NCBI RefSeq assembly: GCF_006345805.1
Contig: NC_043017.1
Coordinates: 9,610,001 to 9,674,000, forward strand
Length of the DNA stretch: 64,000 nucleotides
Direction: 5' to 3'
Origin: Octopus sinensis
Taxonomy: Eukaryota
Shown in pieces: positions 3,665 through 63,756 of this stretch. The position numbers and the translations under genes were made by a program. Position 1 is the stretch's first letter, and each line of letters opens with the position of its first letter. The notes under the pieces were generated by a model. The model was not told the origin of the DNA. It searched no databases and was given only the letters and a program-made list of their open reading frames with translations.

Positions 3665-3694
<30 letters not shown>

Positions 3695-3696
<2 letters not shown>

Positions 3697-3838
3697 TGTG
3701 TGTTTGTGTGTATACATACATTACACACATGTATGCAGATACACCGGCTGATCAAACATCAAATGATGATGATGTATATGTGTATGCATGTGTGTGTATT
3801 TGTGGGGGGTATACATACATTATATATATATATATGTG

Positions 3839-3871
<33 letters not shown>

Positions 3872-3884
3872 GTGTATATATTAT

Positions 3885-3935
<51 letters not shown>

Positions 3936-4390
3936 ATATATAATATAATATATATATATATATGTATGTATGTATGTATGTGTGTATATATATATATATA
4001 ATATTTATATATATATATAATGAGTGGAAGGATGGGGTGGAAGTGGGTGTCAGTGTTGTTGTGTTGGAGCAATGAAATGTCAGTAAATGTTAAATGAACT
4101 GTAAACAAGTTTAGTAGAGAACAGGTGGTGGGGAGAGGAGGGGAGGAGAAAGAAAGCCAGAGGCTTATCATAGATGCTTGCATGTAATCCAATACACTGT
4201 CCTCTGTGCATGTGTGTGTGTGCGCGCGTGTGCATGCATATGTGTGTGTGTGGTGTGTTTGTGTGTTTGTGTGTATACATACATTACACATGTATGCAGA
4301 TACACCGGCTGATCAAACATCAAATGATGATGATGTATATGTGTATGCATGTGTGTGTTATTTGTGGGGGGTATACATACATTATATATA

Positions 4391-4433
<43 letters not shown>

Positions 4434-4448
4434 GTGTATATATATTAC

Positions 4449-4537
<89 letters not shown>

Positions 4538-4810
4538 GTGTGTATATTATATATATATATATATTATATATATATATATAATGAGTGGAAGGATGGGGTG
4601 GAAGTGGGTGTCAGTGTTGTTGTGTTGGAGCAATGAAATGTCAGTAAATGTTAAATGAACTGTAAACAAGTTTAGTAGAGAACAGGTGGTGGAGGAGAGG
4701 AGGGGAGAGAAAGAAAGCCAGAGGTTATCATAGATGCTTGCATGTAATCCATACACTGTCCTCTGTGCATGTGGTGTGTGTGCGCGCGTGTGCATGCATA
4801 TGGTGTGTGT
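3695..4810. repeat. Tandem duplication of about 560 bp (2 copies)
   Basis: TATACATACATTAC at 3711 and 4274; CTCTGTGCATG at 4202 and 4761. The copies differ mainly by small indels, and the breakpoints lie in (TG)n. Confidence 0.9.
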
Positions 4811-4892
4811 GTGTGTGTGTGCGTGAATTTATGTGGCATGTGGAGGCTGTAGATGTGTGTTCATCTGCACGAGTGGACTTGAATGGTATAAG

Positions 4893-5352: not shown

Positions 5353-5602
5353 ATATATATGTATATATATGTAAAAGTAGAACGTTGGAATGAGTGCTCA
5401 ATTTCTTTATTTGTGAATTAAGGCTATCATTGGTTTCATGTTAAGAAAAGTGGGAAAATATCCAAATATCTTAACAATTTCTCAAGCCAATCACCCAGAG
5501 AACGGTGTTCGCCTCTGTGATTGGTTTGAAAAATTGTTAAGATACTTGAATATTTTCAACTTCTTAACATGAAACCAATGGTAGCCTTAATTTACAACTA
5601 AA

Positions 5603-5645
<43 letters not shown>

Positions 5646-11625: not shown

Positions 11626-12097
11626 TCATCGTCATCATTATCATCATCATCGTCATCATCATCATCATCATCATCATCGTCATCATCATCATCATCATCG
11701 TCATCATCACCATCATCATCATTGCTGCTGTTGTATTTGTTGATGTTGTTATTGTTGTTGATGTTTTTCTGATATTGTTTTTTTTTGTTTTTGTTTTTAT
11801 CACTGTTGTTGTTGTTGCTGTTGTGACGTATTCCCATTTTTTTCTTTTTTTATTGCTTTAACGATGTCTCTTGTCTTTGCTGCTTCACCCTCTCTAAACG
11901 GCCCATCCTATTCTAAACCTGAATCGGCAAGTCCAGGCATGTGCTTTACAGCTGCACAAATATCTTTGCCCTACTTGTGTGTGTGTGTGTGTGTGTGTAT
12001 GTGTGTGTGTGTGTGTCTGTATGTGTGTGTGTGTGTGTGTGTGTATGTGTGTATGTGTGTGTGTGTGTGTGTAAATTTGTATGTACACTCATACATT

Positions 12098-12129
<32 letters not shown>

Positions 12130-12155
12130 CATACAAATATACATGCATATTCACA

Positions 12156-12193
<38 letters not shown>

Positions 12194-12373
12194 TACATAT
12201 ATAGATTAATAAACAGATTGATAGATCAATAGATAGATAGACATAGATCGATAGATAGATAAACAGACAGACAGACAGGATGACAGACAGACAGGATGAT
12301 AGACAGACAGATAGATATGCATACATACATATGTACATAAACACACAGATATATATTCTATTTGTGATATGCA

Positions 12374-16524: not shown

Positions 16525-16832
16525 CTTCATGTATTTGTCAATGGCATTAACCGCACTGTGTAATTTCTCTTATGTAAATAACTAAGGCTATAAATGTGCT
16601 CTACTATTTTTTGTATTGAGATAAGATCAGACAGTTGCTGTGTTGATGATAGCTACTGAGACAGAAACACGTACCCTCAGCTCTTATCTCCCTGAAACTG
16701 TGTGTGTGTTTGTATGTGAGTATATAGGAGAGGGTGGACACACGAAAAAGGTATTCCAGAAGGATCCGGGCCCCCGTCAGGCCTGCGAAACTTGAACACG
16801 GAACCAAATACGAAGTAGCTTATAACCAAATG

Positions 16833-16868
<36 letters not shown>

Positions 16869-17322
16869 CATTTGGTTATGTGCTATATATATATATATAT
16901 ATCTGTGTATGTGTGTGTGTATAAATATATACACACACACACACACGCACAATCATACACACCCGTGTAGATATAGAGAAAGAAAGAGAGACAGATAGAC
17001 AAACAGGCAGTTAGATACATACATACATACATACATACACACACACATACATACACACATACATAGATACATACATACATGCGTGTATATATGTATATAT
17101 ATATATATATACAGATACACAGTGAGAAGGTGCGACATTGAAAAAGACAAAAAGAAAAGAATACAAATAATATATTCATATTGTTTTGATGTTTCTGTTG
17201 CTTAACTGCTAAGCTTTGTGTGTTTGCGTGCGTGCGTACATGTGTGTGTGTGAGTGCGTATTTGTATACATATATGTGTGTGTGTGTGTATGTGTGAATA
17301 TATTCATGCAATATATGTTTGT

Positions 17323-18965: not shown

Positions 18966-18997
<32 letters not shown>

Positions 18998-19284
18998 CTA
19001 TTTATACATATACATGCACGTGTAAGCAAACGCGCGCGCACACACGCACACATACACATGGATTTTACTACGTACATATATGTGAATATATCTGTGCATG
19101 TGTATATACATACATGCATATATATATATATATATATACACATACATAAATACATACATAAATACATATATATATATGATTATCAATTTATATAATATAT
19201 ATATATATATATATATTAACAAATATAAATATATACATACATACATACATATATATGTGTGTGGTGTATGTGTGTGTGTGTTAC

Positions 19285-19338
<54 letters not shown>

Positions 19339-28082: not shown

Positions 28083-28193
28083 ATGTATGTATCTATGTAT
28101 GTATGTATGTATGTATACGTGCATATTAATATATATATAATATATATATTATATTATATATATATATATCTATATATATATAATATATATATA

Positions 28194-29214
28194 CTAGCAT
28201 ATCGCCCGGCGTTGCTCGGGTTTGTAAGGGAAATAACTATATAAGCATTTTTAGAGAGTTACTTCCCTTATAGATGCTAATTCGGGCTTTCTAAGCCATT
28301 TCTGTTTTGGTGTCTTCAAGCCATGAAGTCGTTCTTCTAAAAGAACGCTGGTCTCCTTGACAACGCTTTACGACGTTGATTTCCTTACACTCCCTTCCCC
28401 ACAGCTTCACGAGGGAGGGAAGAGGGGGAGAAGCAAACAGGTGCAGGTGTGACCATGGACGCCAACTCCGCCGCCATCGACATACGAAAAAATATGCATT
28501 AAAATGGAATAAAAAATGATGTTAAATTATTTTTAAAATCGTAGACTCATCGTAGACGCGCGCTAATACCCAGACGGGCTCGATATGAATCACGATTATA
28601 AGATACCCGAATTTGGTTAAACTGCACCGCAAAATGTGGGAGTAGTTAGGAATCTAAATCGAAGGGGACAGACACTCACACAACTACAGTTTTATATATA
28701 TACTATGAGTATCGCCCGGCGTTGCTCGGGTTTGTAAGGGAAATAACTATATAAGCATTTTTAGAGAGTTACTTCCCTTATAGATGCCAATTCGGGCTTT
28801 CTTAGCCATTTCTGTTTTGGTGTCTTCAAGCCATGAAGTCGTTGTTCTAAAAGAACGCTGGTCTCCTTGACAACGCATTACGACGTTGATTTCCTTACAC
28901 TCCCTTCCCCACAGCTTCACGAGGGAGGGAAGAAGGGGAGAAGCAAACAGGTGCAGGTATGACCATGGACGCCAACTCCGCCGCCATCGACACACGAAAA
29001 ATTATGCATTAAAATGGAATAAAAAATGATGTTAAATTATTTTTAAAATCGTAGACTCATCGTAGACGCGCGCTAATAGCCAGACGGGCTCGATATGAAT
29101 CACGACTATAAGATACCCGAATTTGGTTAAACTGCACCGCAAAATGTGGGAGTAGTTAGGAATCTAAATCGAAGGGGACAGACACTCACACAACTACAGT
29201 TTTATATATATAGA
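28194..29214 (-). mobile_element. Head-to-tail dimer of a non-autonomous Helitron of about 510 bp
   Basis: On the minus strand: A|TC 5' end (29214), 3' hairpin CCCGAGCAACGCCGGG, CTAG|T end (28194). The two near-identical units span 28194-28702 and 28703-29214. Confidence 0.88.
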
Positions 29215-31227: not shown

Positions 31228-31520
31228 GCGTGCGTGCGTGCAGACATGCATACATACATACATACACACACACATACATACGTACGTACATACATACATA
31301 CATACACGCACACATACATACATACATTCATACATACATACACACACACGCACACACATATATACATGGGTGAGAGAGCCGAGAAGTGGAGCGGTTCGAC
31401 GTGAGGCCTGTGGAACCACGCTGTGTAATCTGCTATTTGTTTCTCTAAGACTTGTCATCTTGTAGATAAAAGTGTGTGTGTGTGAGCGCGCGCGCGCGCG
31501 CGTGTGTGTGTGTGTGCGTG

Positions 31521-31863
31521 TGTGCAGACGTGAAAATGCGCATGTGTTTGTTCACGTATGTAAGGTACATTGAAAAGAAGTGCTAGTATTAATAGTAGTA
31601 GTAGCATTACTTGGTAATACGTTGGTTGGTTGGTGGTGATAGAACCGAGGCCAGGCTACCAGCTTACCTGTTCTTCAGATAAACTAAAGATAAACTTTGA
31701 GAGTTTCTAGCTCTCGACGTGCTTCCGTAAATTCGCTTTTTACCAAAATATATAACAAGTCTTGCCTCGAGACAGACGCATCAACCTCGTTGGAATACTT
31801 ACTATATACATACATTTTAACCTCACCAACCATCTATCTATCTGTCCATCTATCTATCTATCC

Positions 31864-31939
<76 letters not shown>

Positions 31940-32057
31940 CTCCATTTACCATTCTGTTTTGTTTATCTCTCTCTTTTTCTCCGTCTCTGTCTGTCTCTCT
32001 CTCCCCTTGTCTGCCTGATCGCCTGCCTATTTATATATCTATCAACCTTCTATTTCC

Positions 32058-32094
<37 letters not shown>

Positions 32095-32328
32095 ATTTTA
32101 CAACCCCCGTCTATCTTTATCTCTCAACAGTTCTTCCTTCCCTCTCTCTCTCTCTCTCTCTCTTACGAAATACATAATATGCCTCTGTTAACGACTGAAA
32201 ACCTGGCACCAAAAACGGTCCTGGATACATAAACGGTAGGGACCAGTTTATTGTATTTCTTTCGTATTGTTTTTTTTTTTTCATTGTCACAGACTCTCTC
32301 TCTTTCTCTCTCTCTCTATCTATCTATC

Positions 32329-32395
<67 letters not shown>

Positions 32396-32871
32396 CTGTC
32401 TTTACCTTACTTTTTCTTATTTTGTATATTCACATTTGCGAATACACATGAATTCTTGTACGTAAAATATACCCGAACACTCATTAATATATACACAATA
32501 CACGTGTGTGTGTGTGTGTGCAGACGTGAAAATGCGCATGTGTTTGTTCACGTATGTAAGGTACATTGAAAAGAAGTGCTAGTATTAATAGTAGTAGTAG
32601 CATTACTTGGTATACGTTGGTTGGTTGGTGGTGATAGAACCGAGGCCAGGCTACCAGCTTACCTGTTCTTCAGATAAACTAAAGATAAACTTTGAGAGTT
32701 TCTAGCTCTCGACGTGCTTCCGTAAATTCGCTTTTTACCAAAATATATAACAAGTCTTGCCTCGAGACAGACGCATCAACCTCGTTGGAATACTTACTAT
32801 ATACATACATTTTAACCTCACCAACCATCTATCTATCTGTCCATCTATCTATCTATCCATCTATCTATCTA

Positions 32872-32921
<50 letters not shown>

Positions 32922-33068
32922 CTATCTATCTATCTGTCTGTCTGTCTATCTCTCCATTTACCATTCTGTTTTGTTTATCTCTCTCTTTTTCTCCGTCTCT
33001 GTCTGTCTCTCTCTCCCCTTGTCTGCCTGATCGCCTGCCTATTTATATATCTATCAACCTTCTATTTC

Positions 33069-33103
<35 letters not shown>

Positions 33104-33354
33104 TATATATATATTATATATATATATATATACACATATACAATTTTACAACCCCCGTCTATCTTTATCTCTCAACAGTTCTTCCTTCCGTCTCTCTCTT
33201 TCTCTCTCTCTTACGAAATACATATAATATGCCTCTGTTAACGACTGAAAACCTGGCACCAAAAACGGTCCTGGATACATAAACGGTAGGGACCAGTTTA
33301 TTGTATTTCTTTCGTATTGTTTTTTTTTTTTCATTGTCACAGACTCTCTCTCTT

Positions 33355-33435
<81 letters not shown>

Positions 33436-33547
33436 CTGTCTTTACCTTACTTTTTCTTATTTTGTATATTCACATTTGCGAATACACATGAATTCTTGTA
33501 CGTAAAATATACCCGAACACTCATTAATATATACACAATACACGTGT

Positions 33548-33560
<13 letters not shown>
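31521..33560. repeat. Tandem duplication of about 1.0 kb (2 copies)
   Basis: CAGACGTGAAAATGCGC at 31525 and 32521 (period 996). Unique sequence is nearly identical, microsatellite lengths differ, and breakpoints lie in (TG)n. Confidence 0.93.
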
Positions 33561-36262: not shown

Positions 36263-36738
36263 CTAGCAGTATCGCCCAGCGTTGCTCAGGTGTGTTTCGA
36301 CCGTTTAGAATTGGAATTTTTGAAAAGTAAATATTTTGCATTATGTAGCTTTAAGTGAACATTTTTTCTGGTTGAAATACACCGAAAAATGGCGACACAG
36401 CAGTCAAAAAATCGTAAAAAATAGGGATTTTCATAGAAAAAAAGCACCTTTTTGATGTAAATAATTTTTGGTGTTAACACGGTCCGATTTGAATTTTTTC
36501 TTCTACGGAAGGAAGAGCATGAAAATCCCTATTTTTTACGATTTTTTGACTGCTGTGTCCACACTTTTCGGTGTATTTCAACGAGAAAAAATGTTCACTT
36601 AAAGAGAATAAATAACAAGCTACATAATGCAAAATATTTACTATCATACTCCCAGTTTTGGTCAACTTGCGCCGCAGGGTCTCGGAGGAGATAGTGTTAG
36701 TTGAAGGCTACCAAACCTACCATACACAGACAACGTCA

Positions 36739-37741: not shown

Positions 37742-37962
37742 GTTTGTGTGTCTGTGTTTGTCCCCCTAGCATTGCTTGACAACCGATGCTGGTGTGTTTA
37801 CGTCCCCGTCACTTAGCGGTTCGGCAAAAGAGACCGATAGAATAAGTACTGGGCTTACAAAGAATAAGTCCCGGGGTCGATTTGCTCGACTAAAGGCGGT
37901 GCTCCAGCATGGCCGCAGTCAAATGACAGAAACAAGTAAAAGAGTAAAAGAGTAAAGAGTAA
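37540..37962 (+). mobile_element. SINE family A, full length (best reference copy)
   Basis: GGCGCAGGATTGGCTGTGTGG...GGTTCAGTCCC...CORE-like block...internal microsatellite...CCAGCATGGCCGCAGTCAAATGACAGAAAC(AAGTAAAAG)n. Confidence 0.92.
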
Positions 37963-38632
37963 CAATGATGCCATCAAGAGGTAGGCCTTGAAACAGAATG
38001 CATTCTCCCCTGATGACCCCATAAACTTGCTAGCTCCTGGTATGTGGAGTTTTCAACTGGTAGCACTTGCATATGCAAGTTGCTCGATTAAAGGCGGTGC
38101 TCCAGCTTGGCCGCAGTCAAATGACTGAAACAAGTAAAAGAGAAAGAGAGTATGTTATGTATTGACTACAGACCGTTATACATTGGCCACAAGAAATGAT
38201 CCATTTCTGTTTACTGTCTACACATGTCAGCAATGATATAAGCTGTCAATACAACATGCCTACATTGTCATATACTCTCGATACAACATGCCCAGCCTAT
38301 GATATTCATGTTTATACTGTTATTTAGAGCCTACACAACACTGTTATACACCATCTCTTCAACATGCCCTCATTGTTATGTACTGTCTGCGCCACATGTT
38401 CATACTGTTATATGCTGTCCACACAAAATGTCCACATTGTTCTATGCTGTCCATACCACATGTCCACACCAGTATATAGAGACTGCACAGCACATGTCCA
38501 TGTTTTTATATATGCTGTCCACACAACAAGTCCACCCTGTTATATAGTGTCCCTACAACATGACCCCACCGTTTATGTTCTGTCTATATAATATGTCCAC
38601 ATAATCCCACTTCTGACAGATAAAGTTAAATT

Positions 38633-38700
38633 TAATGGCGGTGCCCCAGCATGGCCACAGCTCGTGAGCTGAAACTAGATAAAATATAAAATATATAAAA
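38633..38700 (+). mobile_element. Short LINE 3'-end insertion
   Basis: TAATGGCGGTGCCCCAGCATGGCCACAGCTCGTGAGCTGAAACTAGATAAAATA, identical to the copy at 43202. Confidence 0.8.
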
Positions 38701-41024: not shown

Positions 41025-41380
41025 ATCCTTAAATCCTTAAATCCTTAAAAATGTTTCAGCCCGAAAGCCGCGGCCATGCTGGGGCACCACCGCTGAATGA
41101 GCTACACTAATATGTGAATCCACCTCTGATACGTGGCACTTGGTCAACAAGGGAGTTCGATGCCGCTGCCCGCATCTGTGTCTCCTGTCGTGAGGTAGGT
41201 TCATCTGGGACCCCCGACAAGAAGAGATCCAGTTTAGTTTTAAAGAAACCCACATCCACAACATGCAAGTCTCTCAGGCATTTAGGGAGGATGTTAAAGA
41301 GCTGTGGTCCTCTGAAACCCAAGCTGTTGCAGTATCTGGATCTGTATTTTGATGGTGATGTTGGAATCTTTGGCACCATT
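41025..41380 (-). mobile_element. 5'-truncated CR1/L2-group LINE: ORF2 C-terminus, 3' UTR and (TTAAGGAT)3 tail
   Basis: ORF 41107-41379 reads NSLGFRGPQLFNILPKCLRDL...FKTKLDLFLSGVPDEP...SNSL, followed by GCGGTGGTGCCCCAGCATGGCCGC...GCTGAAAC. Confidence 0.88.
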
Positions 41381-43105: not shown

Positions 43106-43201
43106 GTAATTTAGTAAATAATCATGGCGACACCCAATCTTAGCTATTTTGTTTTCTGTTAATTCTTCACAAAAAAAAAAATAAAAATAAAAATAAAAAT
43201 A

Positions 43202-43270
43202 TAATGGCGGTGCCCCAGCATGGCCACAGCTCGTGAGCTGAAACTAGATAAAATAAAAATAAAAATAAAA
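43202..43270 (+). mobile_element. Short LINE 3'-end insertion in an A-rich target
   Basis: Identical over 54 nt to the copy at 38633; (TAAAAA)n on both sides. Confidence 0.8.
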
Positions 43271-58019: not shown

Positions 58020-58200
58020 TATTGAAAAGGTTGCAAGACACAGCGAAAATTTTAGGACAATAAAAATAAGAAAAATGTGGAAATTTTACCAGTGAGAGTG
58101 TTACATAATAAGGCACAAAAAGAAAATGACTCTCCCCAGACACAACAGAATATGCTTCAACACACGAACCCACATAAAGAATCTTGCAAACCATATCCAA
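58020..58200. mobile_element. Unclassified interspersed repeat X
   Basis: ATTGAAAAGGTTGCAAG...GGCACAAAAAGAAAATGACTCTCCCCAG; its first 120 bp are homologous to 62789-62908. Confidence 0.65.
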
Positions 58201-62719: not shown

Positions 62720-62909
62720 TAGTTCTAAAACAGCCTTGGTTTTTTATCTCATTACGAATAAAAAAATTTCATATATACGTATATTGACTATTGAAAAGGT
62801 TGCAAGAAGCAACGAAAATTTTAGGAAAATAAAAGTAAGAAAAAAGTGGAAATTTTACCGGTGAGTGTGATACATTATAAGGCACAAAAGCAAAATTACT
62901 CTCTGCAGT

Positions 62910-62981
62910 TCCCATGTGGTCTAGTGGTTAGGATTCCTGGCTTTCACCCAGGCGGCCCGGGTTCGATTCCCGGCATGGGAA
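62910..62981 (+). tRNA. trnE-UUC: tRNA-Glu (anticodon UUC)
   Basis: 72 nt. Acceptor stem TCCCATG/CATGGGA 7/7; anticodon stem CCTGG/CCAGG with loop CT-TTC-AC; T stem CCGGG/CCCGG with loop TTCGATT. A and B boxes are intact and the sequence closely resembles animal tRNA-Glu. No encoded CCA. Confidence 0.96.
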
Positions 62982-62985
62982 CGTC

Positions 62986-62992
62986 TTTTTTT
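62986..62992 (+). terminator. RNA polymerase III oligo-T terminator (T7)
   Basis: TTTTTTT begins 5 nt after the tRNA discriminator base. Confidence 0.8.
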
Positions 62993-63047
62993 CAGCGGTG
63001 GTGCCCCAGCATGGCCGCGTCCTTTGGGCTGAAACATTTTTAAGGAT
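62991..63047 (+). mobile_element. 3'-terminal 57 nt of the CR1/L2-group LINE
   Basis: 54/57 identical to the reverse complement of 41041-41097, including one TTAAGGAT tail unit. Confidence 0.9.
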
Positions 63048-63756
63048 ATACATATATATAAATGTACATATATACACACATATATACCTATGCACACTCA
63101 CACATATATATACGTATATACACACACACACATATTGTTGTTCTTATGTTAAATTGTCGTATGTCCAAATGCGTTTTTTTTTTTTCAATATTTATATTTT
63201 CTTGCAATAGCCGGTTCTTTTGGTCAAATTATCGTATCTCCAGTTGCTTCAGATGCCAAGATATCAAAAACTGTCAAAGTGTCGTACAACGGTTTTGTTA
63301 TGGAATGGTGAAACTATTTTTTCGTTTTCTGAAAAAGCAGCGTTTTGGACTTACGACACTTTTGCATTATACCAACGATATATATATATATATATCATCA
63401 TCATATATATATATGCATGAACATTCATATATGTAATTAACTCATATTGTAAACTCTTACTTCCTTGGGTATTTTGCCGTTTTTATTGATACGCATGCAT
63501 GTATATGTTTATATACTTATATTATATGTTCGTAGATGAATGTACACACACATGCATGTATGTACGCACATATTCACACACACATATACACACCAATCTT
63601 CCTCCTGTCTGTCCGCCTTCACTCCCCCCCCCCCTATTCTCTTTGACACTCTTTCACTCCCCCATATTACTCATACTCTTTTCCCATTGTCACTCTTTCA
63701 CTATACACACACAAACACATGCATCTACACATGCCAAATACATATATATATATATA

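What the first reader, a model, noticed from the sequence alone, without database searches (positions are those of the whole stretch)
62789..63047. Intact tRNA-Glu joined to a LINE 3' end: candidate pre-tRNA/LINE chimeric retrocopy or proto-SINE
Seen: (1) the 120 bp upstream are a copy of repeat X (58020-58139), and the homology stops within 1 nt of the tRNA 5' end while the 58-kb copy continues; (2) the tRNA has no CCA but has a CGTC-T7 trailer; (3) the last two Ts overlap the start of a 57-nt LINE 3' end (54/57 to 41041-41097) that ends in its TTAAGGAT tail unit. Established: LINE machinery makes chimeras of oligo-U-ended Pol III RNAs and LINE 3' ends (U6/L1), and many SINEs are a tRNA head plus a LINE tail. 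Inference: a 5'-mature, 3'-unprocessed tRNA was co-inserted with the LINE end into repeat X, producing a new and possibly functional tRNA gene with the same tail type as SINE A. Caveats: I see no TSD, and repeat X does not resume downstream.
Basis: partly seen in the sequence, partly recalled or inferred. Interest (0 to 1): 0.7.

Follow-up and report, generated by a model that had tools for sequence, protein, structure and literature searches.

The report
tRNA-Glu gene fused to LINE tail
A perfect glutamate tRNA gene sits directly between one copy of a local repeat and the last 57 bases of a jumping gene (LINE); this most likely records the LINE's copying enzyme switching onto an unfinished tRNA transcript and pasting both in together, but one locus cannot prove it.

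Summary
The parts are:
- an intact tRNA-Glu(UUC), 62910-62981, the only tRNA in the window;
- no encoded CCA, then a CGTC-T7 trailer;
- a 57-nt LINE 3' end (62991-63047) whose first two Ts are the last two Ts of the T-run, 54/57 identical to the copy at 41 kb;
- a 120-bp repeat X upstream (105/120 identical to 58020-58139) whose homology ends 1 nt before the tRNA.

The 41-kb copy is a real 5'-truncated LINE. It carries an ORF2 C-terminus, a two-hairpin 3' UTR and (TTAAGGAT)n tail repeats. The 57 nt are exactly that hairpin module plus one tail unit.

My best reading (about 0.5) is a one-off chimeric retrocopy. The LINE reverse transcriptase would have switched from its own 3' end onto the oligo-U end of a 5'-processed, 3'-unprocessed pre-tRNA, as in U6/L1 chimeras.

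Several things are unproven:
- there is no target-site duplication;
- X does not resume downstream;
- X has only two copies;
- no DNA from the same genome could be reached.

The main rival (about 0.3) is a resident tRNA gene next to an independently inserted tail-only LINE fragment. Such fragments are common here (4 of 16 tail-bearing copies).

The proto-SINE idea is not supported. T7 and an internal T5 would stop Pol III before the tail. SINE A shares the hairpin module but not the tail repeat.

The parts
62789..62908 (+). Repeat X, copy next to the tRNA (120 bp). The homology to the 58-kb copy ends at 62908.
   Evidence: It is 105/120 identical to 58020-58139. Both ends of the homology are sharp in both copies. 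There is no further copy in the window, no Rfam match and no protein-level relative.
62909..62909 (+). A single T between X and the tRNA. It could be an extra or untemplated base, or the last diverged base of X.
   Evidence: Read directly from the sequence: T here against A at 58140.
62910..62981 (+). Intact tRNA-Glu(UUC), 72 nt, with canonical A-box and B-box regions and discriminator A. No CCA is encoded.
   Evidence: Found by ARAGORN and by Rfam RF00005 at 66.5 bits. It is 72/72 identical to tRNA-Glu genes on L122-L130. All stems pair in the cmscan alignment.
62982..62992 (+). Trailer CGTC plus T7, a Pol III terminator. The last two Ts (62991-62992) also match the LINE.
   Evidence: Native trailers of identical tRNA-Glu genes elsewhere are CG-T4, CC-T6 and CGC-T4.
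62991..63047 (+). The 5'-truncated LINE 3' end. It comprises hairpin 1 (62995-63018), hairpin 2 (63019-63029), GAAAC, a T5 (63037-63041) and one TTAAGGAT tail unit (63040-63047).
   Evidence: It is 54/57 identical to 41041-41097(-). The core 17-mer at 63000-63016 is an exact match.
63048..63135 (.). TA/CA-rich microsatellite directly after the tail unit. It is the probable priming target, or a microsatellite born from the tail.
   Evidence: TRF output. By my reading, 5-6 of the 16 tail-bearing copies are followed by TA-type tracts, against 14.6% of the window in such tracts.
58020..58139 (+). Repeat X, second copy, without tRNA or LINE end. Unrelated sequence follows it, then a SINE from about 58250.
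41025..41379 (-). Reference copy of the same LINE, 5'-truncated. It has the ORF2 C-terminus (41379-41110), a TAG stop (41109-41107), a two-hairpin 3' UTR and three TTAAGGAT units (41048-41025).
   Evidence: The translation is. It is 68% identical to P0001, a LINE ORF2 C-terminus on L001 that is followed by the same hairpin module.

Best explanation
This is a single-event chimeric retrocopy.

Proposed sequence of events:
1. A LINE with a structured 3' UTR and octamer tail repeats started target-primed reverse transcription on its own RNA in a TA-rich microsatellite. I take it to be CR1/L2-like, from memory of its ORF2 C-terminal motif.
2. It copied only the 57-nt module that its reverse transcriptase recognises: two hairpins plus a tail unit.
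3. It then switched template onto the 3' oligo-U end of a nuclear pre-tRNA-Glu(UUC). That pre-tRNA had already lost its 5' leader to RNase P but still carried its trailer (CGUC-U5-7).
4. It copied the pre-tRNA to its 5' end, and the cDNA was joined to the upstream DNA at the edge of repeat X.

The TT shared by the T-run and the LINE start would be the microhomology of the switch. The copy keeps the internal A and B boxes and regains a T7 terminator. It is therefore probably transcribable as an ordinary tRNA gene, and it is not a SINE.

Shown: the anatomy, the identity of each part, and the junction positions. Inferred: the order of events, the RNA intermediate, co-insertion, and function.
For: - Sense orientation: a full-length tRNA is joined through its oligo-T directly to a LINE 3' end that retains its tail unit. 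This is the layout of U6/L1 chimeras.
- No CCA but a gene-type trailer, so the template would be a precursor, not a mature tRNA.
- The only repeat in the 5' flank breaks 1 nt from the mature 5' end. A cDNA that ends at an RNase P-processed 5' end predicts this.
- The 57 nt are a genuine LINE end and the whole two-hairpin module, with compensatory changes across families.
- Both edges coinciding by chance is unlikely. My rough estimates are about 3-5% for a repeat boundary within 1-2 nt of a given site, and about 0.1-0.2% for the 5' edge of a tail-bearing element in the same orientation within about 12 nt of the tRNA end (16 elements per 64 kb).
- The three differences from the 41-kb copy all lie in hairpin 2 and still allow a hairpin. 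The insert therefore need not be old, which fits an unmutated tRNA.
- Established knowledge: 5'-processed, 3'-extended pre-tRNAs with oligo-U ends are normal nuclear intermediates.
- LINE-1 forms chimeras with U6 and, rarely, with tRNAs (bioRxiv 10.1101/2025.02.02.635956; PMC4476161, listed).
Against: - There is no target-site duplication around tRNA plus tail.
- X does not resume after the insert within 950 nt. A clean insertion into X is therefore not shown, and a target deletion or a natural end of X must be assumed.
- X has only two copies with identical 5' and 3' limits, so its end at 62908 may be its own end.
- The tRNA is 72/72 canonical with a normal terminator, exactly as a resident, selected gene would look.
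- Tail-only fragments of this LINE group are common (38080, 38628, 43197), so independent insertion is a realistic source of the 57 nt.
- No second example and no source gene could be sought.
- Known tRNA/L1 chimeras are mostly half tRNAs in antisense.
Confidence: 0.5

Rival explanations
1. This is a resident, functional tRNA-Glu gene. A severely 5'-truncated (tail-only) copy of the LINE later inserted by ordinary retrotransposition into the TA microsatellite that began right after the gene's terminator. The end of repeat X next to the tRNA is a coincidence. Nothing was co-inserted.
For: - The tRNA is 72/72 identical to conserved tRNA-Glu genes and has a typical short trailer plus T-run.
- There is no TSD and X does not resume, as expected if X simply ends there.
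- 4 of 16 tail-bearing copies in the window are tail-only and start at the same place, just upstream of hairpin 1.
- Tails of this group often lie next to TA tracts, and such tracts cover 14.6% of the window.
- Repeat boundaries are dense: about 3-5% of sites have one within 1-2 nt.
- In DNA saturated with insertions, only the constrained gene and its terminator are protected, so foreign DNA can come right up to their edges.
Against: It needs two independent coincidences at both exact edges of one 83-nt unit. My rough joint estimate is 1e-5 to 1e-4 per tRNA gene. The LINE fragment would have to start precisely in the T-run, in the sense orientation.
Confidence: 0.3
2. The inserted unit is larger and includes X (about 62785-63105). 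It would be either a three-part chimera (LINE end, then pre-tRNA, then a third RNA X) or a twin-priming product. In the latter, a 5'-truncated X element in minus orientation was primed from the left and joined head-to-head to the tRNA/LINE cDNA primed from the right.
For: - Both X copies share the same outer end (TATTGAAAAGG...), as for the natural end of an element. In both loci that end abuts microsatellite-like DNA.
- The 14-mer ATATATACGTATAT occurs on the + strand only at 62771 and 63106, bracketing the whole unit like a TSD.
- This reading removes the need for X to resume downstream.
Against: - A shared 14-mer or longer between such flanks arises at 4.6% of random positions in this microsatellite-rich window, and more often in TA-rich flanks.
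- It lies 58 nt beyond the tail unit and 4 nt before X.
- X resembles no known RNA or element.
- X contains T4 runs on both strands, so it is not a Pol III RNA.
Confidence: 0.08
3. The insertions were aimed at a Pol III gene. X and/or the LINE fragment belong to elements that integrate preferentially at tRNA genes, as Ty3 and the Dictyostelium TRE5, TRE3 and DGLT-A elements do. A resident gene would thereby acquire mobile DNA at both edges.
For: Both edges of the gene are occupied by repeats. The two X copies are direct repeats 4.77 kb apart, which superficially resembles a pair of LTRs.
Against: - X lacks TG...CA ends, a TSD, a primer-binding site or polypurine tract, and any internal coding capacity.
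- The other 15 LINE or SINE tails in the window are not next to tRNAs.
- A position 1 nt from the mature 5' end is closer than known tRNA-targeting elements integrate (from memory).
Confidence: 0.07
4. This is a proto-SINE: the tRNA head plus LINE tail is, or was, a transcribed and mobilisable unit that founded or belongs to a SINE family.
For: A tRNA head with internal promoter, followed by the recognition module of a LINE, is the classic SINE layout. SINE A in the window uses a related module.
Against: - A T7 terminator lies between head and tail, and a T5 lies inside the module before the tail unit. Pol III would stop before the tail.
- The head is an unmodified canonical tRNA.
- There is no second copy in the window or in the metagenome collection scanned.
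Confidence: 0.03

Closest known systems
U6 snRNA/LINE-1 chimeric retrocopies (template-switch chimeras; PMC4476161, bioRxiv 10.1101/2025.02.02.635956)
   Same: A full-length Pol III transcript with an oligo-U 3' end, in sense orientation, is fused to a 5'-truncated LINE 3' end that keeps its tail. The junction has A/T microhomology.
   Different: The LINE here is not L1. It has a structured 3' UTR and octamer tail repeats instead of poly(A). The partner is a pre-tRNA rather than U6. There is no TSD, whereas L1 chimeras normally have TSDs of 9-19 bp.
tRNA/LINE-1 chimeric insertions in mammals (21 loci)
   Same: A tRNA sequence and a LINE 3' part are inserted in one event.
   Different: Those are mostly tRNA halves in antisense orientation, ascribed to twin priming, and have TSDs. 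Here the tRNA is complete, in sense orientation, carries its genomic-type trailer, and has no TSD.
Tailless retropseudogenes of tRNAs and other small RNAs (PMC5322556)
   Same: Retrocopies of small structured RNAs, made by LINE machinery, that lack a poly(A) tail of their own.
   Different: Those are truncated at single-stranded positions, carry no LINE segment, and the curated set has TSDs. This copy is full length and carries a LINE end.
tRNA-derived SINEs with LINE-derived tails, and SINEU (snRNA head plus LINE-type tail; PMC3747384, PMC4494074)
   Same: A small-RNA head is followed by the 3' recognition module of a partner LINE of the 'stringent' type.
   Different: SINEs are multi-copy and their transcript runs from head into tail. 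Here the head is an unaltered tRNA, two Pol III terminators precede the tail unit, and only one copy is known.
tRNA-gene-targeting retroelements (Ty3, Dictyostelium TRE5/TRE3, DGLT-A) - from memory
   Same: Mobile DNA lies immediately up- and downstream of a tRNA gene.
   Different: Those elements integrate at characteristic distances from many tRNA genes. Here there is one tRNA, X has no element features, and the other LINE and SINE copies are not near tRNAs.

Membership tests
LINE-mediated chimeric retrocopy (U6/L1 type) | A complete small Pol III RNA, in sense orientation, is joined at its oligo-U/T 3' end to a 5'-truncated LINE 3' end | tested here: met
   tRNA 62910-81, then CGTC-T7, then the LINE end from 62991. 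The two overlap by 2 nt.
LINE-mediated chimeric retrocopy (U6/L1 type) | The LINE part is a genuine LINE 3' terminus with its own tail | tested here: met
   The 41-kb copy has the ORF2 C-terminus, a stop codon, the hairpin UTR and (TTAAGGAT)3. The fragment ends in one TTAAGGAT unit.
LINE-mediated chimeric retrocopy (U6/L1 type) | Target-site duplication flanks the whole chimera | tested here: not met
   The 30 nt before the tRNA and the 160 nt after the tail share no repeat of 6 nt or more. SINE and LINE copies of this group in the window show no consistent TSDs either, so this weighs less than it would for L1.
LINE-mediated chimeric retrocopy (U6/L1 type) | An empty site (paralogue or orthologue) lacks both parts together, with the flanks continuous | tested here: inconclusive
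   The X copy at 58 kb lacks both parts, but its downstream sequence is not found after the insert. No orthologous DNA is available.
LINE-mediated chimeric retrocopy (U6/L1 type) | A source gene with the same trailer but different flanks exists elsewhere in the genome | not testable with these tools
   No DNA from this genome is in any reachable collection.
tRNA-derived SINE | The Pol III transcript can run from the head through the LINE-derived tail | tested here: not met
   T7 at 62986-62992 and T5 at 63037-63041 precede the tail unit.
tRNA-derived SINE | Many dispersed copies | tested here: not met
   There is one match in the window and none in the metagenome scan. The genome itself was not searchable.
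Nuclear tRNA gene (tRNA-Glu-UUC) | Canonical cloverleaf, internal A and B boxes, no encoded CCA, T-run terminator within a few nt | tested here: met
   It is 72/72 identical to tRNA-Glu genes of other eukaryotes.
Nuclear tRNA gene (tRNA-Glu-UUC) | Transcribed and aminoacylated in vivo | not testable with these tools
   This needs Pol III ChIP or tRNA sequencing.
CR1/L2-type ('stringent') LINE 3' end | Conserved 3' UTR stem-loop(s) followed by short tandem tail repeats, shared with partner SINEs | tested here: met
   The two hairpins are conserved in 12 sequences, with 2 pairs showing compensatory changes. The tails are (TTAAGGAT)n, (GTAAAAGA)n and (AAAAT)n.
CR1/L2-type ('stringent') LINE 3' end | The reverse transcriptase falls in the CR1/L2 clade | not tested
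   No RT domain is in the window or on L001. The assignment rests on my recollection of the ORF2 C-terminal motif ...LE.IQR..TR.I...SY.ERL..L.L.SLE.RR... seen on L001.
tRNA-gene-targeting retroelement (Ty3 / TRE type) | The flanking repeat is an element with LTR or LINE features that recurs at a fixed distance from tRNA genes | tested here: not met
   X has no TG..CA ends, TSD, PBS or coding capacity, and has only two copies. Recurrence is untestable with one tRNA.

The most novel reading that the evidence does not exclude
A LINE that needs its own structured 3' end for priming can still duplicate host Pol III genes. It would do so by jumping from that 3' end onto oligo-U-ended pre-tRNAs. The product here is a new, intact and probably functional tRNA-Glu gene carrying a LINE 'tag'. 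If such tagged tRNA genes recur in this genome, that would be a retroposition route for tRNA gene dispersal in an invertebrate. It would also be a directly observed first step of the long-postulated 'tRNA head plus LINE tail' origin of SINEs, needing only loss of the T-run.
Probability: 0.35. Interest if true: 0.6.

Novelty: new variant of a known kind. Interest (0 to 1): 0.42.

Why it matters
Chimeras between small Pol III RNAs and LINE 3' ends are well documented for mammalian L1. They are hardly documented for LINEs that recognise a structured 3' UTR, where template switching may be the only way for host RNAs to be retrocopied.

A complete, sense, trailer-bearing tRNA fused to such a LINE end would show three things:
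- nuclear pre-tRNAs can serve as templates for these enzymes;
- new tRNA genes can arise by retroposition;
- what the raw material of a tRNA-derived SINE looks like before it loses its terminator.

If it is instead a resident gene with a neighbouring insertion, the locus is ordinary. It then mainly illustrates how densely this genome is packed with tail-only LINE fragments.

Tried and rejected
- **Finding more DNA of the same genome.**
  - The LINE ORF2 C-terminus gave one relative only, P0001 on a 746-bp contig of GCA_024449705.1.
  - Ten window ORFs are not in the protein collection.
  - The 65-aa ORF spanning X, tRNA and tail found 160 proteins. All are translations of tRNA-Glu genes of other eukaryotes, and none extends into X or the LINE end.
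  - A translation of X found nothing.
- **DNA scans.**
  - The tRNA-to-LINE junction pattern had 0 hits in metagenome contigs.
  - The LINE 17-mer gave 120 loci, none of which carries the longer hairpin-2 pattern, so I take them as chance matches.
  - The gapped LINE pattern gave only bacterial chance hits in GTDB genomes and none in viral contigs.
- **X as a known RNA or element.** There was no Rfam match even at E up to 10. I saw no TIRs and no LTR hallmarks. The open minus-strand frame has 11 of 39 amino-acid differences between the copies, so X is not coding.
- **X resuming downstream, or a decayed tRNA at 58 kb.** Sensitive BLAST found nothing.
- **TSD searches.** Neither the chimera model nor the tail-only model has one. 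The 14-mer flanking a larger unit is only weakly above chance.
- **Small-RNA partners upstream of the other tail-only fragments.** None was found.
- **Literature strings.** Searches for the repeat sequences and for the assembly accession found nothing.
- **Helenus/Ajax-type LTR elements with tRNA-like LTRs (PMC10886601).** Rejected, because only one X copy is followed by the tRNA.
- **Sub-threshold mir-297-like hits at 63043-63113.** These are microsatellite artefacts.

Full report
**What is there**

The window is AT-rich (38% GC), full of microsatellites and of short interspersed repeats, and has no convincing protein-coding gene. From memory the SINE type suggests a cephalopod, but I could not test this. 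The window holds one tRNA gene. ARAGORN calls tRNA-Glu, anticodon TTC, at 62910-62982. Rfam's tRNA model matches 62910-62981 end to end at 66.5 bits against a gathering score of 29, with every stem paired.

The 72 nt are identical at all positions to tRNA-Glu(UUC) genes on nine contigs of unrelated marine eukaryotes. I reached those contigs through a protein-level trick, searching with the translation of an ORF that runs through the gene. The tRNA is therefore canonical and unmutated, with normal A-box and B-box regions. It encodes no CCA. The discriminator A is followed by CGTC and seven Ts. The identical genes elsewhere have comparable native trailers: CG-T4, CC-T6 and CGC-T4.

**The downstream piece is a real LINE 3' end**

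62991-63047 matches the reverse complement of 41041-41097 at 54 of 57 positions. The match begins at TTCAGCGG, so its first two bases are the last two Ts of the T-run. It ends in one TTAAGGAT unit.

Read on the minus strand, the 41-kb copy has these parts:
- a 90-codon open frame (41379-41110);
- a TAG stop;
- a UTR of about 55 nt;
- three TTAAGGAT units.

That peptide is 68% identical to P0001, the only relative in 5.8 billion proteins. P0001 lies on a 746-bp contig (L001) in which the stop codon is followed at once by the same conserved sequence and by (GTAAAAGA)-like repeats. Upstream frames of L001 show the motif ...LE.IQR..TR.I...SY.ERL..L.L.SLE.RR.... I recall this motif from the ORF2 C-terminus of CR1/L2-type LINEs. 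That clade assignment is from memory and was not tested.

**The 57 nt are the LINE's whole 3' module**

The 17-mer GGTGCCCCAGCATGGCC occurs 16 times in the window with up to 3 mismatches, against 0.04 expected. Aligning twelve of these ends gives two adjacent hairpins followed by GAAAC and tail repeats. The twelve comprise both (TTAAGGAT) copies, L001, SINE A copies, two short copies and two other elements.
- Hairpin 1 is nearly invariant.
- Hairpin 2 shows compensatory CG to UA changes at two pairs.
- The tail repeats differ by family: (TTAAGGAT)n, (GTAAAAGA)n and (AAAAT)n.

The fragment next to the tRNA contains both hairpins (62995-63018 and 63019-63029) and one tail unit. Its three differences from the 41-kb copy all lie in hairpin 2 and still allow a 4-bp hairpin.

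SINE A shares the module at about 76% identity but carries the (GTAAAAGA)n tail of an L001-like partner, not (TTAAGGAT)n. 'Same tail type as SINE A' is therefore only partly right.

**The upstream piece**

62789-62908 is 105/120 identical to 58020-58139. The last matching base is 62908. One T follows, then the tRNA. At 58 kb, unrelated sequence follows instead.

Both copies also begin at the same base. There is no third copy in the window, even at low stringency or with an nhmmer profile. X matches no Rfam family and no protein. It has T4 runs on both strands, so it is not a Pol III RNA. It lacks LTR or TIR features (read from the sequence). Its open minus-strand frame differs at 11 of 39 residues between the copies, so it is not coding.

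Nothing resembling the 58-kb continuation is found in the 950 nt after the LINE end. No direct repeat of 6 nt or more flanks either the tRNA+LINE unit or the LINE fragment alone.

**Weighing the explanations**

The layout is [flank][full-length sense Pol III RNA with oligo-T][5'-truncated LINE 3' end with tail]. This is the signature of template-switch chimeras such as U6/L1. tRNA/L1 chimeras are now also known in mammals, though mostly as antisense tRNA halves with TSDs.

The absence of CCA and the presence of a trailer point to a precursor as template. A flank break 1 nt from the mature 5' end fits a 5'-processed, 3'-unprocessed intermediate, which is a normal nuclear species (established knowledge).

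Two rough chance estimates bear on this:
- about 3-5% of sites in this window have some repeat boundary within 1-2 nt;
- with 16 tail-bearing elements per 64 kb, a same-orientation 5' edge within about 12 nt of the tRNA end has a chance of about 0.1-0.2%.

Both together come to about 1e-5 to 1e-4 per tRNA gene. That is lower than a plausible prior for a chimeric retrocopy. These are my own estimates, and the scan may have looked at many tRNAs.

Four points count against the chimera:
- there is no TSD, although the SINE and LINE copies of this group in the window show no consistent TSDs either;
- X does not resume downstream;
- X may simply end at 62908;
- the tRNA looks exactly like a selected resident gene.

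Tail-only fragments are also frequent. 38080-38152, 38628-38700 and 43197-43270 all start a few bases upstream of hairpin 1, two of them at the position of the LINE stop codon. By my reading, 5-6 of 16 tails abut TA-type microsatellites, which cover 14.6% of the window. An independent insertion into a TA tract that started right after the terminator is therefore a realistic rival.

My estimates are:
- chimera, about 0.5;
- resident gene plus independent insertion, about 0.3;
- a larger unit that includes X, about 0.08. This is hinted at by a 14-mer, ATATATACGTATAT, found on the + strand only at 62771 and 63106, but such matches arise at 4.6% of random positions;
- tRNA-targeted insertion, about 0.07;
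- proto-SINE, about 0.03.

**Why not a proto-SINE**

Pol III would terminate at T7 (62986-62992). The (TTAAGGAT)-type module also contains a T5 (63037-63041) just before the tail unit. The head is an unaltered tRNA. No second copy exists in the window or in the metagenome collection.

**What could not be done**

No DNA of this genome or of a close relative could be reached by protein look-ups or by DNA scans. The decisive tests are therefore left as next steps: the source gene, other junctions, an X consensus, and an orthologous empty site.

**Verdict**

The chimera interpretation is the best single explanation but is unproven. The SINE-precursor extension is not supported.

If the chimera is real, it is a new variant of a known kind: a Pol III RNA/LINE chimera made by a LINE with a structured 3' end, with a complete pre-tRNA as partner. 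Interest is moderate.

Noticed in passing
window 38080-38152, 38628-38700, 43197-43270 (all +), with 62991-63047: Four of the 16 tail-bearing LINE/SINE copies are 'tail-only' fragments of 57-75 nt that begin a few bases upstream of hairpin 1. Two of them (93% identical to each other) begin at TAATGGC, the position of the LINE stop codon on L001. Either reverse transcription often ends right after the hairpin module, or a tail-only RNA is itself being copied.
   Followed up: partly
window 41025-41379(-), 37886-37950(+), 38626-38690(+); L001 527-590: One conserved two-hairpin 3' module is shared by several LINE and SINE families that differ in their tail repeats: (TTAAGGAT)n, (GTAAAAGA)n and (AAAAT)n. 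Hairpin 2 has compensatory changes. This suggests a family of related LINEs with distinct tail specificities.
   Followed up: partly
window 63037-63041 and 41051-41055(-): The (TTAAGGAT)-type LINE 3' module contains a T5 run just before the tail repeats. That is a Pol III terminator, which should make this subfamily a poor SINE partner. SINE A's module has no such run.
   Followed up: no
window 62771-62784 and 63106-63119: An exact 14-nt direct repeat, ATATATACGTATAT, is found only at these two + strand positions. It brackets X, the tRNA, the LINE end and 58 nt of microsatellite. It is a weak TSD candidate, since matches of this length arise at about 5% of random positions here.
   Followed up: partly
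window 3671-4835, 28184-29212, 31508-33560: Three large tandem duplications, with units of about 0.5-1 kb and 93-97.5% identity between neighbours.
   Followed up: no
window 5405-5603, 12018-12197, 16816-16885, 18974-19331, 36326-36642: Segments that match their own reverse complement (palindromic or inverted-repeat structures, 65-94% identity).
   Followed up: no
window 58020-58139 and 62789-62908, minus strand: One minus-strand frame is open across all 39 codons of repeat X in both copies, but 11 of 39 residues differ, so this looks like chance rather than coding.
   Followed up: yes
window 63043-63125: Sub-threshold Rfam hits to mir-297, mir-466 and mir-3149 (52 bits or less against gathering scores of 85-100) fall on the TA/CA microsatellite and are composition artefacts.
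   Followed up: yes
L122-L128 (marine metagenome contigs): Seven contigs from different marine samples carry the same tRNA-Glu gene with the same 40-nt upstream flank. Six of them also share the downstream flank, and L127 diverges right after the T-run. This presumably reflects one abundant planktonic eukaryote. Its tRNA is identical to the window's.
   Followed up: no
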